A stretch of DNA of 64,000 nt from Isurus oxyrinchus (Eukaryota), in contig JANJGN010000052.1 of the NCBI GenBank assembly GCA_026770705.1, positions 2,604,001 to 2,668,000 of the forward strand, given 5' to 3'. The notes beneath the pieces are model-generated. The model was not told where the DNA came from. It saw nothing but the letters and a program-made list of their open reading frames with translations, and made no database searches. How positions within the stretch are numbered: position 1 is the first letter of the stretch; each line of letters opens with the position of its first letter. Position numbers and translations under genes: made by a program. Positions 7,330 through 51,717 of the stretch are shown in pieces.

Positions 7330-7369
7330 ATGATCGGGAAATCTTACTTCCTCCTGTCACTTCTCCAAG
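7330..7369 (+). CDS. Gene A leader exon (MIGKSYFLLSLLQ)
   Basis: ATG, hydrophobic core, CAAG|GTAATA phase-1 donor, acceptor AG at 7288-7289. Confidence 0.85.
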
Positions 7370-8896
7370 GTAATAACATCGTCAGCTTGGACAGATTTAT
7401 GGCTAATAGTCTTTGTAAAAGAACATTCTTATTGAGCTCTGATAGGGAACCGATTCAGCAGTGAGCCAGTGTACAAACTCACACCAAGTCCCATTCACCC
7501 ATCACTCCTGTGCTCTCTGATATACACTGACTCCCTGTCTGACAGCAGAACTGCAGGACAGCAGAGACCTCAAAGGGTTTCAGGGCTGGAGGAGGTGACA
7601 GTGATAGGGAGTGGAGAGGGAGGATGGAGGGATAAGGAATCAATGAAGAGAATTTGAAAATTGAGTCATTGCTGGACTGGGAGCCATTGTAGGTCAGCGA
7701 GTGACAGGGGAGCGATCGGCTGAATAGAGAAGCAGGGATAAAAACTGGGGGATGAAGTCTATCCTGATGCAAGCACTCCAATATCAATGCCCTGAAATTT
7801 TTCTCACTTGCTGATTTTCATCAGAATTTCCCATGAAGACAACACAGAAGCTCTTAGATTAGACAGGCAGTTCAGCGTCACACTTCCTGTCCCTTCTCAC
7901 CATGCTAGAAAATTCGATAAGGGAGCAAGATAACTGATAGAGAGAAGGGAGGCAAAGCTGTCTGTATGTAAAACTGTCAAATATTCTGAGTTATCATGAT
8001 TGTTTCTGATCTGCTGCAGAGTTTATATTTCATTGAATCTTATCACTTTGCAGCTCAGAGAGAGACCATTGACTCACTGCCTGAAAGGGCGGTGGAAGCA
8101 GATTCAACAGGAACTTTCAGAAGGGGAACTGGATAAATACTTGAAGGGGACATTTTGCAGGGTTGTAGAGGAGAGAGTAGAGGTTAGAGTGGGACTTATT
8201 GGACAGATCTATCAAAGGCCCAGCACAGGCTCGATGGGCCAAATGGCTTCCATCAGTTCCGGATCATTCTACAATCCGATAAATTAAGTCTCTTATCAGT
8301 AACTCTTCAGGCTCCTGCTGCAGGAATGGATCTTTCATAAGGGCAGGGAACAAGCAGTTTCTCATATCATGTTCATATTTATTGACAATTACATAAGTGT
8401 ATGGAACTGTTGAATATTTGAGTCTCTAAAGTGTGGATTTAACCTTCTGGTACACCCAGATCTTGTGCTGGTTACCTTGTCTGGAGGTGTCTTTAACTGC
8501 TCACAGTGATCTGTGGGATTGTCACCCTTGGATGTTGTTCCTGATTTCATGTGGAATCATCTCCTCGATGGAATAGGAGCGGGAATGGATCTGATTTATC
8601 CTCGGTTCCACCTCACCGCTGTGCCCTTGTGTGTTTGACTCCATAGGCCCTTGGTTCTGAACAAATCCTTGTCACCTCAGCTGGTGATCATGAACCTTCT
8701 GTGGGATCCTGGATGTGAACTTGTCCCAACTGTAAACTTGGCAACTCTGCACCTCCATTTTTATCATGAACATTCCTTATCTTCTCTTGTAGTTTTAAAA
8801 GTTGCCCTCTGGTTTCTGAGAGAGTAGAATGGGTAAGAGTAGCGAAATTGGTCACTACTGGCCCACCAAACATGATCTCCGTCAGTGATGGAATAA

Positions 8897-9218
8897 GGTG
8901 AGGTGATGGTGTAGTGGTATTGTTGCTGGATGAGTAATTCAGAGACCCAGGGTAATGTCCTGAGAATATGGGTTCAAATCCTGTCATAATAGATGATGGA
9001 ATTTGAATTTAATAAAAATATGAAATTCAAAGTTTAGTGATGACCACAAAACCATTGTTGGAAATCCCACCTGGTTCACCAGTGCCCTTTAGGGAACAAA
9101 ATTGTCTGGCCGACATGTGACTCCAGACTCCACGTCAATGTGGTTAACTCTTACATTAGGGATGGGTAATAAATCCTGGCCTGGCCAGTGACTCCCACAT
9201 CCCATGAATGAATTTAAC
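8897..9218 (+). mobile_element. tRNA-derived SINE inserted in the Gypsy element
   Basis: A-box-like TGGTGTAGTGG and B-box GGTTCAAATCC; its 3' tail resembles the LINE end at about 53960-54010. Confidence 0.7.
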
Positions 9219-49828: not shown

Positions 49829-49910
49829 GAGAAAGACAGCGATGGAGGAGAGAGTTTCAGGGACCAGTGACATTGCATTGACCCCCAGTCCACTCTCTGT
49901 GAAACACCAG
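49829..49910 (+). CDS. Gene B cytoplasmic exon 1b (RKTAMEERVSGTSDIALTPSPLSVKHQ)
   Basis: Duplicate of exon 1a with intact splice sites. Confidence 0.85.
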
Positions 49911-51468
49911 GTACAGGAGCTGTTTACACTCACTCCAAAGCTTCAATCTCAGTGTGTAGACAACACATGTCACAGATTCCCAGCCCAGTTACCCACTGAT
50001 TTGTATCTGTGGAGTCAGCAATGGTTCAGTATCATGCTGTCTCTCTGTTATGACACAGAAACTGGTAAAGGCTGTTGTTTAAAATCCCAGAGGGAAACTT
50101 TAAACAATGTCATAACCTATATTTCCCAGTGGAATGTTTGAGATGCAGCTCTAAATTCAGGAATAAGACCACCAGTTCTTGAGATGGTTTTATATCAAAC
50201 TACTTGAGACATATATTAATTTACACAAGTTAAACATATGCACATGGCTACAAACTAGTATTATCATAAATTTTTAACAAATTCTCAAACTAATCTCCTC
50301 TAAGACAACCCATTATCTTTAAGCAGACACCCAGGCAAAGCATTTTCACCTCACAAATTCCAAATGAGGTTCCTTTCACTTTGGTTCCTTTGCAGACAAG
50401 TGTAGGCTTACAGCTGCTTTGCTGTTACAAGCGTCTGCTCTGCACACACAAAACTGCTCAAGTTATACCCAGCTCTTGAGTGTAAAGAAGACGGAGATTG
50501 ATGGGCTCTTGATTGGTCAGGGGATCAAAGGTTAGGAGAGAAGGTGGGAGAATGGGGTTTGTGAAACATATCAGCCATGTATGAATGGTGGAGCAGACTC
50601 GATGGACCGAATGGTCTAATTTCTCCTCCTATATCTGATGGTCTTATGGCTTCTGTTTGAAGGTAAATTCACAATGTATCATCAGGACCTTTGAACTCCA
50701 TCTCTTCCAATAATAAATCCCCGTTCATTGTATCAATTTTATTAGTAATATAAACGTTGATTGGTTTAAGATTTCACTCTCAGGCCTTTAATGTTTTATT
50801 TAAAAATGCAAATTACCACTTTACCTCTTTGTTTACATCTCAAAACTACTATACATCAAAGCACCCAGACTGGCTGGCTTTAATCCAATTAAAATACACA
50901 CAGACACACACACAGACTAAACCTCTGTTTAAAAAGACAGTTTGCATTTATAATACAAACATTAATAGATTAATAACACTCTGTCTCTGTCCCTCCTCTC
51001 TCCCTCTCTCTCATCCTCTCTCTGATTACAAGGTTCATGTTATTGAGCCTCACACCAGGCACCTGTGTGCAGATTCCAAGCCATCACTCACCAGAGCCAT
51101 TACCGAGGGAGTGCTGCACTGTTGGAGGGTCAGTACTGAGGGAGTGCTGCACTGTTGGAGGGTCAGTACTGAGGGAGTGCTGCACTGACAGAGGGTCAGT
51201 ACTGAGGGAGCGCTGTATTGTCGGAGGGTCAGCACTGAGGGAGTGCTGCACTGTCAGAGGGTCAGTATTGAGGGAGTGCTGCACTGTTGGAGTGTGATAG
51301 AGATTAAATTATAAAGAGAGAGAGAAAGCGAGAGAGACAGAGAAAGAGAGTGAAAAAAAGGGTTAAACCCACTGAGACACGACTGACACTAATGAGGCTG
51401 CAAATAATTTAACCCTATCAGTACCAGTAATTGATGTGAGGATATCTTCTGTTTCCATTTCTCTGTAG

Positions 51469-51717
51469 GGTAAACAGAACGTGCTGATTACTGAGCCCCG
51501 GAACACAACCAGAGACACAACTAGTGAGGGGGAGACCCCAGCTCCCCGGGATCTCTCTGAAGGTCCAGTGGGAGGCGATGTTGGACATGGGAACCCCGAC
51601 AATCCCGCCGAGCTTCTCTACGCCAACATCAACTTTTCAAAGCTGCCCAGCGGTGACAGGACTGTGCACAGGAGCGAGGACACGGAATACGCACAGATCA
51701 GGTTCCAGAAAAACTGA
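51469..51717 (+). CDS. Gene B terminal exon b: ITIM (LLYANI) plus ITSM (TEYAQI)
   Basis: TGTAG acceptor, 249 nt to TGA; classic CD33-type proximal ITIM and distal TxYxxI arrangement. Confidence 0.9.
   Translation, partial: GKQNVLITEPRNTTRDTTSEGETPAPRDLSEGPVGGDVGHGNPDNPAELLYANINFSKLPSGDRTVHRSEDTEYAQIRFQKN

What the first reader, a model, noticed from the sequence alone, without database searches (positions are those of the whole stretch)
7330..51717. Adjacent activating/inhibitory Siglec pair in a probable shark genome
Seen: genes A and B share promoter, leader, V exons and an amino-acid-identical C2-1 exon, and homology stops right after the C2-1 donor. Gene A ends in a TM exon with an intramembrane Arg (LGIRAV) and a 12-aa tail without Tyr. 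Gene B has a neutral TM and an ITIM/ITSM tail. Established: this is the layout of paired receptors such as primate Siglec-5/14 and Siglec-11/16, where the charged TM residue recruits DAP12. Inference: this is an independently evolved paired-Siglec system in cartilaginous fish. Which adaptor is used (DAP12 or FcR-gamma) cannot be read from the sequence.
Basis: partly seen in the sequence, partly recalled or inferred. Interest (0 to 1): 0.85.

Follow-up and report, generated by a model that had tools for sequence, protein, structure and literature searches.

The report
Shark activating and inhibitory Siglec neighbours
Two neighbouring shark genes of the Siglec (sialic-acid lectin) family share their front halves. 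One ends in an activating-type membrane anchor and the other in an inhibitory tail, the same design as primate paired Siglecs; similar genes are already in automatic shark annotations.

Summary
Gene A (7330-19857) and gene B (23997-51717) share upstream DNA, an identical leader peptide, V-set exons (2 in A, 3 in B) and a C2 exon with 5/297 nucleotide differences, all synonymous.

Gene A ends in an exon with an arginine in the membrane helix (LGIRAV) and a 12-residue tyrosine-free tail. Gene B has a neutral membrane helix and tails carrying ITSM, with or without ITIM.

Spliced RNA contigs from one sample show GT..AG joints for C2 to the arginine exon, V to C2, and V to V.

Corrections:
- Contiguous homology ends 32 nt past the C2 donor, but a frameshifted remnant of B's next Ig exon lies in A's last intron.
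- The outermost V domains are only 77% identical.
- The assembly gap lies in a gene B intron between (AC)n arrays. Its continuity could not be tested with reads.

The arginine anchor occurs in RefSeq models from three shark orders, some auto-named "Siglec-14". I found no paper describing it. The scan already found such exons on other pieces of this genome.

The receptor type is well supported. Adaptor use, ligand sharing and true pairing are inferred. This is a new member of a known kind.

The parts
5135..5174 (+). Third leader exon copy (L0). It has an intact ATG and GT donor, 2.2 kb upstream of gene A's leader. Whether it is used is unknown.
6737..7329 (+). Upstream (promoter) region of gene A, homologous to 23404-23996 of gene B.
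   Evidence: 92-95% identity in 250-nt windows
7330..7369 (+). Gene A leader exon: 13 codons plus 1 nt (phase 1), with a GT donor.
   Evidence: the leader matches RefSeq shark Siglec models
14351..14716 (+). Gene A outer V-set exon (Va1). The YFFRIE Arg is present.
   Evidence: V-to-V joint 14716|16736 in RNA contigs
16736..17104 (+). Gene A inner V-set exon (Va2). Its best solved-structure matches are Siglec-5, -8 and -7, MAG and CD33, with the Arg and the three Cys aligned.
   Evidence: joint 17104|17833
17833..18129 (+). Gene A C2-1 exon. Its amino-acid sequence is identical to gene B's.
   Evidence: an RNA contig covers 17832-18113 with 0 differences
18453..18610 (+). Broken remnant of an Ig2 exon in gene A's last intron. 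Only the 3' half remains, it is frameshifted, and the acceptor is lost.
19718..19879 (+). Gene A exon encoding the TM with Arg (LGIRAV) and a 12-aa Tyr-free tail. The stop codon is at 19855-19857, and a donor at 19879 leads to a 3'UTR exon.
   Evidence: joint 18129|19718 in runs X1-X3; conserved in other sharks
20598..20960 (+). Probable 3'UTR exon of gene A. Its start is supported by one RNA contig (19879|20598, GT..AG). Its end is estimated from poly(A) signals at 20935-20999. It contains the patch that is homologous to the DNA just past gene B's distal stop codon.
23997..24036 (+). Gene B leader exon, encoding the same peptide as gene A's.
29320..29697 (+). Gene B outer V-set exon (Vb1). 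It reads YFFT where the others read YFFR, so the binding Arg is lost.
32889..33257 (+). Gene B middle V-set exon (Vb2), 93% identical in protein to Va2.
36440..36808 (+). Gene B inner V-set exon (Vb3), 92% identical in protein to Va2.
37622..37918 (+). Gene B C2-1 exon.
41651..41802 (.). Assembly gap inside gene B's intron between C2-1 and Ig2, flanked by (AC)n arrays on both sides.
42335..42616 (+). Gene B Ig2 exon (I-set type, phase 1-1).
44609..44902 (+). Gene B Ig3 exon. Its best solved-structure match is MAG domain 5.
46189..46285 (+). Gene B TM exon with no charged residue in the helix.
   Evidence: its first 28 nt appear as a spliced loose end in RNA contigs
47008..47089 (+). Juxtamembrane cytoplasmic exon, cassette 1.
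48390..48638 (+). Tail exon, cassette 1: FLYANP (no canonical ITIM) plus TEYAQI (ITSM), then a stop.
   Evidence: this tail type is used in Carcharodon model P0023
49829..49910 (+). Juxtamembrane cytoplasmic exon, cassette 2.
51469..51717 (+). Tail exon, cassette 2: LLYANI (ITIM) plus TEYAQI (ITSM), then a stop.
   Evidence: this tail type is used in Cetorhinus model P0014

Best explanation
The region holds two adjacent, same-strand members of a large shark family of Siglec-type receptors built from interchangeable exons.

Gene A encodes a leader, two tandem V-set lectin domains, one C2 domain and a membrane helix with a buried arginine, followed by a 12-residue tail with no signalling motif. 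By exon arithmetic this is 403 residues. Gene B encodes a leader, three V-set domains, the same C2 domain, two more Ig domains, an uncharged membrane helix and a cytoplasmic tail. The tail is taken from one of two duplicated cassettes (ITSM alone, or ITIM plus ITSM), giving about 818 residues.

The shared 5' block runs from the promoter to the Ig2 donor. It comes from tandem duplication or unequal recombination within the cluster, followed by patchy homogenisation. Gene A later lost most of the intron and the 5' half of Ig2 by deletion, so C2-1 now splices directly to the arginine exon.

Inferred mechanism: gene A's arginine pairs with the two acidic residues of a dimeric ITAM adaptor and signals activation. 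By the placement rule for arginine, an FcR-gamma/zeta-type adaptor is somewhat more likely than DAP12. Gene B's phosphorylated ITIM/ITSM recruits SH2 phosphatases and inhibits.

What is shown: the gene anatomy, splicing of the A-type exons, and conservation of the arginine anchor. What is inferred: sialic-acid binding, adaptor choice, co-expression, and whether the two act on the same ligands.
For: Siglec identity:
- The V exons hit Pfam V-set and Ig_CD22.
- Their best solved-structure matches are all Siglecs: Siglec-5 at 62 bits, then Siglec-8, Siglec-7, MAG and CD33. The essential Arg (YFFRIE against YFFRVE) and all three Siglec cysteines align.
- A low-confidence fold of the Carcharodon homologue P0001 is closest to CD33, MAG, Siglec-10, CD22 and Siglec-5.

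Shared block:
-. The C2-1 exon has 5 synonymous and 0 non-synonymous differences.

Activating end:
-.
- GT..AG joints 18129|19718, 17104|17833 and 14716|16736 appear in contigs of runs X1-X3.
- A 3'UTR intron, 19880-20597, is supported.
- The same anchor, with an invariant Arg and a Tyr-free tail, occurs in RefSeq models from Carcharodon carcharias, Scyliorhinus canicula, S. torazame and Chiloscyllium punctatum.

Inhibitory end:
-.
- The catshark model P0012 (3 V, C2-1, Ig3, TM, tail) maps collinearly onto gene B's exons across the gap.
- Both tail types are used in lamniform models P0023 and P0014.
- The tail aligns without gaps with the ITIM/ITSM end of a turtle Siglec-like protein.

Tandem V domains:
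- The V-to-V joint and database models with 2-4 V domains.

Pairing logic elsewhere:
- In catsharks an inhibitory model (P0012) and an activating model (P0017) share position-specific V types, with support 100/97 and 100/99.

Adaptor rule:
- An arginine in the upper half of a TMD goes with zeta/gamma adaptors, and a central lysine goes with DAP12 (PMC13107469). Here the Arg is residue 11 of 29.
- Siglec-14 nevertheless uses DAP12 (PMC4042635).
Against: - The RNA evidence comes from contigs of a single sample whose RNA status is only guessed by the tool. The joints have just 19-29 letters on the short side.
- All contigs over 19783 read Ala where the window has Pro, and some read Ala for Thr at 19801. 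This genome holds many near-identical arginine exons (scan notes). The joints may therefore come from an allele or a close paralogue rather than gene A itself.
- Gene B's 5' and 3' halves are linked only across an unread gap, and no gene B junction was tested.
- The outer V domains are 77% identical, and B's has lost the binding Arg, so the ligands may differ.
- No adaptor, ligand or cell-type data exist.
- The window's Pro in the middle of the helix is unique among the homologues.
Confidence: 0.68

Rival explanations
1. A and B are not a dedicated pair. They are two neighbours in a large, rapidly shuffling family in which V, Ig, arginine-anchor and ITIM-tail exons are recombined freely. Their 5' similarity reflects a recent local duplication only, and they recognise different ligands or work in different cells.
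For: - Scan notes report many arginine-anchor exons and multi-V genes in this genome.
- Database models combine the anchor with different ectodomains: V-C2, V-V-Ig2-Ig2.
- The outer V domains are 77% identical, with differences concentrated in the C-C' segment (15/26 against 17/99, p = 8e-5). The binding Arg is lost in Vb1 only.
- B has one more V domain than A.
- C2-1 is highly conserved even between species, so its identity between A and B needs no homogenisation.
Against: - The inner V is 92-93% identical and C2-1 is 100% identical in protein.
- The identity profile is a mosaic, with 99.6% windows next to 87% windows, which suggests continued sequence exchange.
- Catshark inhibitory and activating models also share V types.
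Confidence: 0.2
2. Gene A is a decaying or non-signalling copy: a truncated relative of a long-form gene whose anchor no longer couples to any adaptor. It would then act as a decoy or be nearly a pseudogene.
For: - There is a broken Ig2 pseudo-exon in its last intron.
- The window has a Pro in the middle of the helix that no homologue and no RNA contig shows.
- The 3'UTR exon lies in a LINE-like fragment.
Against: - All five coding exons are open with intact splice sites.
- The C2-1 changes are all synonymous.
- An RNA contig matches the A-specific C2-1 sequence with 0 differences over 282 nt.
- The anchor is conserved across three shark orders.
Confidence: 0.07
3. This is an assembly artefact. 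Either A and B are mis-assembled haplotypes or collapsed and expanded repeats, or gene B is a chimera of two genes joined at the gap.
For: - There is a gap of unknown size at 41651-41802.
- The region is rich in tandem duplications: a 3.55-kb V unit at 96.8% identity and duplicated tail cassettes at 94.7%.
- No DNA reads were laid on the region.
Against: - A and B differ by 2-23% per 250-nt window and by large insertions and deletions. They have 2 versus 3 V exons and unrelated 3' ends. This is far beyond allelic variation.
- The same (AC)n array lies on both sides of the gap.
- Exon order and phases across the gap match RefSeq models of other species.
- Both gene types exist in other shark genomes.
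Confidence: 0.05

Closest known systems
Primate Siglec-5 / Siglec-14 and Siglec-11 / Siglec-16 paired receptors
   Same: - They are adjacent genes.
- The 5' segment encoding the first domains is near-identical, and the 3' ends are unrelated.
- The activating member has a basic TM residue and a short tail, and the inhibitory member has ITIM plus an ITSM-like motif.
- In primates, conversion covers only the segment for the first two domains (PMC4042635; PMC5701461, abstract as listed).
   Different: - The shark anchor exon was found only in sharks, so the pairing arose separately.
- The ectodomains carry 2 or 3 tandem V-set domains instead of one.
- The outer V domains are only 77% identical.
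- The shared block runs through a third (Ig2) exon that is broken in gene A.
- The adaptor is unknown.
RefSeq automatic models in other sharks: XP_041037190.1 (Carcharodon, 'CD33-like'), the S. canicula 'Siglec-14 isoform X2' and 'Siglec-13' models (P0002, P0007), XP_072326180.1 (S. torazame) and XP_072409577.1 (Chiloscyllium)
   Same: - They have the same V, C2-1 and arginine-anchor exons. Identity to the window exons is 77-93% for V, 83-96% for C2-1 and 78-87% for the anchor.
- Inhibitory relatives lie on the same Carcharodon contig.
   Different: - These are predictions with names transferred from mammals. I found no paper describing them.
- The window's own proteins were not in the databases searched.
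Myelin-associated glycoprotein (MAG, Siglec-4) and CD33-related Siglecs
   Same: - The V domain scores about equally with Siglec-5, -7 and -8, MAG and CD33.
- Among Siglecs, gene B's Ig2 matches MAG domain 4 best, though contactin-2, sidekick-1 and DSCAM score higher overall. Ig3's best match outright is MAG domain 5.
- The tail has the CD33-type ITIM-then-ITSM arrangement.
   Different: - Orthology to any one mammalian Siglec was not shown.
- MAG has a single V domain and no paired activating form.
- The published view is that fish genomes lack CD33-related Siglecs (PMC7226832). That paper does not mention sharks or cartilaginous fishes.
Other multigene families with activating and inhibitory forms (KIR/LILR, teleost LITR and NITR, Xenopus CEACAM pairs)
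   Same: They are tandem clusters with modular Ig exons. Members have either a charged TM or an ITIM tail, and they evolve by duplication and sequence exchange (PMC4810170 and PMC5112662, from the titles and abstracts listed).
   Different: Here the ligand-binding domain is a Siglec-type V-set with the sialic-acid arginine.

Membership tests
Siglec family (I-type lectins) | N-terminal V-set Ig domain most similar to Siglec V-sets | tested here: met
   Pfam V-set and Ig_CD22 match all five V exons. The 17 best solved-structure matches are all Siglecs.
Siglec family (I-type lectins) | Conserved arginine on the F strand that binds the sialic-acid carboxylate | tested here: met
   YFFRIE aligns with YFFRVE of Siglec-5. 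The Arg is present in Va1, Va2, Vb2 and Vb3 and replaced by Thr in Vb1.
Siglec family (I-type lectins) | Siglec cysteine pattern: an intra-sheet B-E disulfide plus an extra Cys for the bond to the C2 domain | tested here: met
   All three V-domain cysteines align with those of Siglec-5. The C2-1 domain has the extra Cys pair. The disulfide bonds themselves were not observed.
Siglec family (I-type lectins) | Binding of sialylated glycans | not testable with these tools
   This needs Fc-chimera or glycan-array experiments.
CD33-related Siglec subfamily | Falls in one clade with mammalian CD33-related Siglecs, apart from MAG, CD22, Siglec-1 and Siglec-15 | tested here: inconclusive
   - V domain scores: Siglec-5 62 bits, MAG 57, CD33 56.
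- The distal Ig domains favour MAG, but few long Siglecs have solved structures.
- No tree with curated mammalian sequences could be built from sequences supplied by the tools.
CD33-related Siglec subfamily | Membrane-proximal ITIM plus a C-terminal ITSM-like motif | tested here: met
   Tail-2 has LLYANI and TEYAQI with the tyrosines 23 residues apart. It aligns without gaps to a turtle Siglec-like tail. Tail-1 has only the ITSM.
Paired activating/inhibitory receptors (Siglec-5/14 type) | Adjacent genes with a shared 5' block and a sharp boundary before unrelated 3' ends | tested here: met
   The boundary is the Ig2 donor (18610/42622), and a deletion in gene A makes it appear to lie just after C2-1.
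Paired activating/inhibitory receptors (Siglec-5/14 type) | Near-identical ligand-binding domains | tested here: inconclusive
   In protein, the inner V is 92-93% identical, C2-1 is 100% and the outer V is 77%. B has an extra V, and its outer V has lost the Arg.
Paired activating/inhibitory receptors (Siglec-5/14 type) | Activating member with a basic residue in the TM and a short tail without motifs | tested here: met
   The junction is spliced in RNA contigs, and the anchor is conserved in three shark orders.
Paired activating/inhibitory receptors (Siglec-5/14 type) | Inhibitory member with a neutral TM and ITIM/ITSM | tested here: met
Paired activating/inhibitory receptors (Siglec-5/14 type) | Association of the activating member with an ITAM adaptor (DAP12, FcR-gamma or zeta) | not testable with these tools
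A scan note reports an FcR-gamma-like gene elsewhere in this genome, which I did not check.
Paired activating/inhibitory receptors (Siglec-5/14 type) | Both members expressed, in the same cells | tested here: inconclusive
   The same RNA sample holds the A-type joints and a spliced end identical to gene B's TM exon. Contigs cannot show the cell type or assign paralogues.

The most novel reading that the evidence does not exclude
The shark cluster preserves an early form of the immune Siglec system. By another first-stage note that I did not check, the cluster lies next to hepcidin (HAMP), as MAG and CD22 do in humans. On this reading, the CD33-type ITIM/ITSM tail and the activating/inhibitory pairing logic were already in place near the base of jawed vertebrates.

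The lectin part is an array of two to four (elsewhere up to seven) tandem V-set domains, an architecture unknown in described Siglecs. The domains diversify mainly in the C-C' segment. In this pair the inhibitory receptor has lost the sialic-acid arginine in its outermost domain while the activating one keeps it. The two would then read overlapping but deliberately different glycan patterns.
Probability: 0.3. Interest if true: 0.75.

Novelty: new member of a known kind. Interest (0 to 1): 0.5.

Why it matters
The fish Siglec literature I found states that fish have only Siglec-1, CD22, MAG and Siglec-15 and lack inhibitory CD33-related Siglecs (PMC7226832, which does not mention sharks or cartilaginous fishes). 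A shark cluster with ITIM/ITSM-tailed Siglecs and arginine-anchored activating partners would change that picture. It would mean the balance of inhibitory and activating sialic-acid sensing either arose more than once or is much older than mammals. It also offers a natural system with tandem lectin domains.

The finding gives concrete constructs for testing adaptor coupling in cartilaginous fish: the gene A and gene B ectodomains, the arginine anchor, and the two tail types. Its weight is limited for three reasons. The same genes are already predicted in RefSeq for other sharks. Paired receptors are a familiar theme. Nothing functional is known.

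Tried and rejected
I could not inspect the orthologous loci in Carcharodon or Scyliorhinus, so conservation of gene order rests only on shared contig names and neighbouring accession numbers.
- I first took a hydrophobic reading upstream of the cytoplasmic exon (about 46934-47007, and its copy) for gene B's TM. It is in the wrong frame and has a stop in cassette 1. The true TM exon is 46189-46285.
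- I looked for a second arginine-anchor exon in the window with tblastn, using six models that carry it. None was found.
- I looked for further gene B-type exons downstream of gene A. Only the Ig2 remnant and a 145-nt patch that matches the sequence just past gene B's distal stop codon turned up.
- Assigning a subfamily from solved structures was inconclusive.
- The V-domain tree has an unresolved backbone and its bootstrap had not settled. Only the starred small clades are used.
- The AlphaFold model of P0001 is of low confidence (mean pLDDT 60). Its fold matches are supportive only.
- The region search with the anchor reached only shark Siglec-like proteins of 148-472 residues. It cannot confirm the scan note that other receptor families reuse the exon.
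- Six literature searches found no paper on shark or chondrichthyan Siglec pairs.
Exons were searched one by one by reference, frames were checked by arithmetic, and the natural homologue P0001 was folded instead.
- Complex prediction was not used because no shark adaptor sequence was available.
- The assembly gap was neither filled nor looked up.

Full report
**Origin of the window.** The V exons are closest to shark proteins. Identity is 93% to a Carcharodon carcharias 'CD33-like' model and 79% to a Scyliorhinus canicula 'Siglec-14' model. It is 80% to a Cetorhinus maximus model. The window's own proteins were not in the databases. The source is therefore a shark, apparently close to lamniforms, and I cannot name the species.

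**Assembly gap (checked first).** The N run at 41651-41802 lies in gene B's intron between C2-1 (ends 37918) and Ig2 (starts 42335). No coding frame crosses it, and both exons are phase 1-1. Degenerate (AC)n arrays on the same strand flank it (41517-41636 and 41819-41903). This suggests an unread microsatellite.
- The single read-laying run was used on gene A, so continuity was not tested with reads.
- Exon order across the gap matches RefSeq models of other elasmobranchs.
- I neither filled the gap nor looked it up.

**The duplication.** Self-alignment shows blocks of 6737-18161 collinear with 23404-37950, at block identities of 91-98%.
- A third copy of the promoter/leader part lies at 4486-5791.
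- Gene A has a roughly 2-kb insertion in its first intron.
- Gene B has an extra 3.55-kb V unit.
- Identity in 250-nt windows is a mosaic from 77% to 99.6%. The outer V exon is more diverged (87-89%) than most of the neighbouring intron windows (84-98%).

**Exons.** Frames were checked by arithmetic.

| Exon | Gene A | Gene B |
|---|---|---|
| Leader | 7330-7369 | 23997-24036 |
| V exons | Va1 14351-14716; Va2 16736-17104 | Vb1 29320-29697; Vb2 32889-33257; Vb3 36440-36808 |
| C2-1 | 17833-18129 | 37622-37918 |
| Ig2 | broken remnant 18453-18610 | 42335-42616 |
| Ig3 | none | 44609-44902 |
| TM | arginine-anchor exon 19718-19857 including the stop | 46189-46285 |
| Cytoplasmic | 12-residue tail in the anchor exon | 47008-47089 or 49829-49910 |
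| Tail | - | 48390-48638 or 51469-51717 |
| Length | 403 residues | about 818 residues |

- All V exons have intact acceptors and identical donors.
- The C2-1 exons differ at 5 of 297 nt, all synonymous.
- The anchor is a 29-residue hydrophobic span with Arg at position 11, followed by 12 residues without Tyr.
- Gene B's TM helix is uncharged.
- The distal tail has LLYANI and TEYAQI. The proximal tail has FLYANP and TEYAQI.

**Where the homology really ends.** However, 18453-18610 in gene A's last intron matches the 3' half of gene B's Ig2 exon, up to 6 nt past its donor, at 93.7%. A frameshift splits this remnant into 18455-18553 and 18559-18603.
- A S. torazame model joins Ig2 directly to the arginine anchor. 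The ancestral activating gene therefore probably had Ig2.
- Gene A lost the intron and the 5' half of Ig2 by deletion.
- A 145-nt patch at 20795-20939 matches the DNA just after gene B's distal stop codon.

**Siglec identity.**
- Pfam V-set and Ig_CD22 match all V exons.
- The best solved-structure matches are Siglec-5, -8 and -7, MAG, CD33, Siglec-10 and sialoadhesin. The binding Arg and all three cysteines align.
- C2-1 matches MAG and CD33 domain 2.
- Ig2 matches MAG domain 4 among Siglecs, and Ig3's best match is MAG domain 5.
- A low-confidence model of the natural homologue P0001 (pLDDT 60) is closest to CD33, MAG, Siglec-10, CD22 and Siglec-5.
- I could not decide whether the family belongs to the CD33-related group.

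**Transcripts.** Contigs of three runs from one sample were laid on 14200-20100. The tool only guesses that these runs are RNA, but the precise GT..AG skips show spliced RNA. They give these joints:
- 18129|19718, from C2-1 to the anchor exon.
- 17104|17833, from Va2 to C2-1.
- 14716|16736, from V to V.

One contig covers 17832-18113 with no difference from gene A, including three sites where A differs from B. One contig joins 19879 to 20598 with GT..AG, which gives a 3'UTR intron. A loose end at the Ig2-type donor is identical to the start of gene B's TM exon, so that exon is expressed too.

Caveats on this evidence:
- Contigs are short and the short sides of the joints are 19-29 letters.
- All contigs read Ala instead of the window's Pro at 19783, and some read Ala for Thr at 19801.
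- The scan reports many near-identical anchor exons in this genome. An allele or a close paralogue cannot be excluded.

**Family context.**
- The arginine anchor occurs, with an invariant Arg and Tyr-free tail, in RefSeq models from four shark species in three orders. A region search found it only in shark Siglec-like proteins.
- Models with 2, 3 or 4 tandem V domains exist in sharks and rays.
- In the V tree, the window's two outer V domains group with the first V of a Cetorhinus model (support 97/96).
- A catshark inhibitory model and a catshark activating model share both V types (100/97 and 100/99).
- Differences between the outer and inner V types concentrate in a 23-27-residue C-C' segment (19/23 against 8/99, p = 2e-12). 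In mammalian Siglecs this is the variable, specificity-determining region. That last point is from my own knowledge.

**Mechanism.**
- Shown: the anatomy, the splicing and the conservation.
- Inferred: the Arg docks an acidic pair of a dimeric ITAM adaptor. A recent review assigns an arginine in the upper half of the helix to zeta/gamma modules and a central lysine to DAP12 (PMC13107469). Siglec-14, however, uses DAP12 (PMC4042635). I rate FcR-gamma/zeta as somewhat more likely than DAP12, but the sequence cannot decide.
- Gene B's ITIM/ITSM should recruit SH2 phosphatases, and the two cassettes would give tails of different strength.

**Comparison and novelty.**
- The layout parallels Siglec-5/14 and Siglec-11/16, where conversion covers only the first two domains (PMC4042635).
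- It differs in its tandem V domains, its less similar outer domains, and an anchor exon found only in sharks.
- A paper on fish Siglecs says fish genomes lack CD33-related Siglecs (PMC7226832); it does not mention sharks or cartilaginous fishes. I found no paper on shark Siglec pairs.
- Automatic annotation already carries such models, and earlier follow-ups in this scan reached the same reading on other pieces of this genome.
- Verdict: a real and well-formed example, and a new member of a known kind. Interest is moderate.

Noticed in passing
window 5135-5174 (unit 4486-5791): A third copy of the promoter/leader unit lies 2.2 kb upstream of gene A's leader. It has an intact ATG, encodes a 13-residue leader that differs at two residues, and keeps its GT donor. 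It could be an alternative first exon or a relic.
   Followed up: partly
window 4605-4706, 6793-6879, 23466-23546; also 1540-1653: A relic of a cytoplasmic exon lies just upstream of each of the three leader copies. The relic resembles residues 266-299 of Carcharodon model P0025, which has a YxN-rich tail. The matching tail of the upstream gene sits at 1540-1653. The duplicated unit therefore began inside a neighbouring gene's 3' end.
   Followed up: partly
window 29320-29697: The outer V domain of gene B reads YFFT instead of YFFR and has a 4-residue longer C-C' segment. Comparisons with the inner V domains give dN/dS of about 1.1.
   Followed up: partly
window 14450-14560 and 16830-16900: RNA contigs match the V exons up to the C-C' segment and then diverge. 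One contig runs from Va2 (16882) back to Va1 (14505) with 7 extra letters. This suggests expressed paralogous V exons that are mosaics of the two V types.
   Followed up: no
window 29264-33314 and 32833-36865: A 3.55-kb unit (one V exon plus its intron) is tandemly duplicated in gene B at 96.8% identity. The V exons inside the two copies differ much more from each other (73% in protein for Vb1 against Vb2) than the introns do.
   Followed up: partly
window 46394-48653 and 49217-51732: The cytoplasmic cassette (juxtamembrane exon plus tail exon) is duplicated at 82-95% identity. The two tail types each correspond to tails used in different lamniform RefSeq models.
   Followed up: partly
window 8550-10590: Gene A's first intron has a roughly 2-kb insertion that is absent from gene B. 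It carries long open frames on the minus strand and is probably a retroelement.
   Followed up: no
window 21240-23180, 6261-6578, 60249-60568; reverse strand at 48075-48284 and 51051-51293: Arrays of a 33-nt satellite recur between and inside the Siglec genes. Other satellites lie at 532-1530 (24 nt), 2950-4470 (43 nt) and 30930-31960/34475-35470 (37 nt).
   Followed up: no
window 63504-63758: A further, much more distant V-set exon (26-36% identical to the family's V domains) lies at the right edge of the window. It probably starts another Siglec-like gene.
   Followed up: no
window 19783 and 19801: The assembly has Pro and Thr in the membrane helix. At 19783 all RNA contigs, Carcharodon P0001 and Chiloscyllium P0033 read Ala, and the Scyliorhinus models read Val. 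At 19801 part of the contigs read Ala. This could be an allele, a paralogue or an assembly error.
   Followed up: partly
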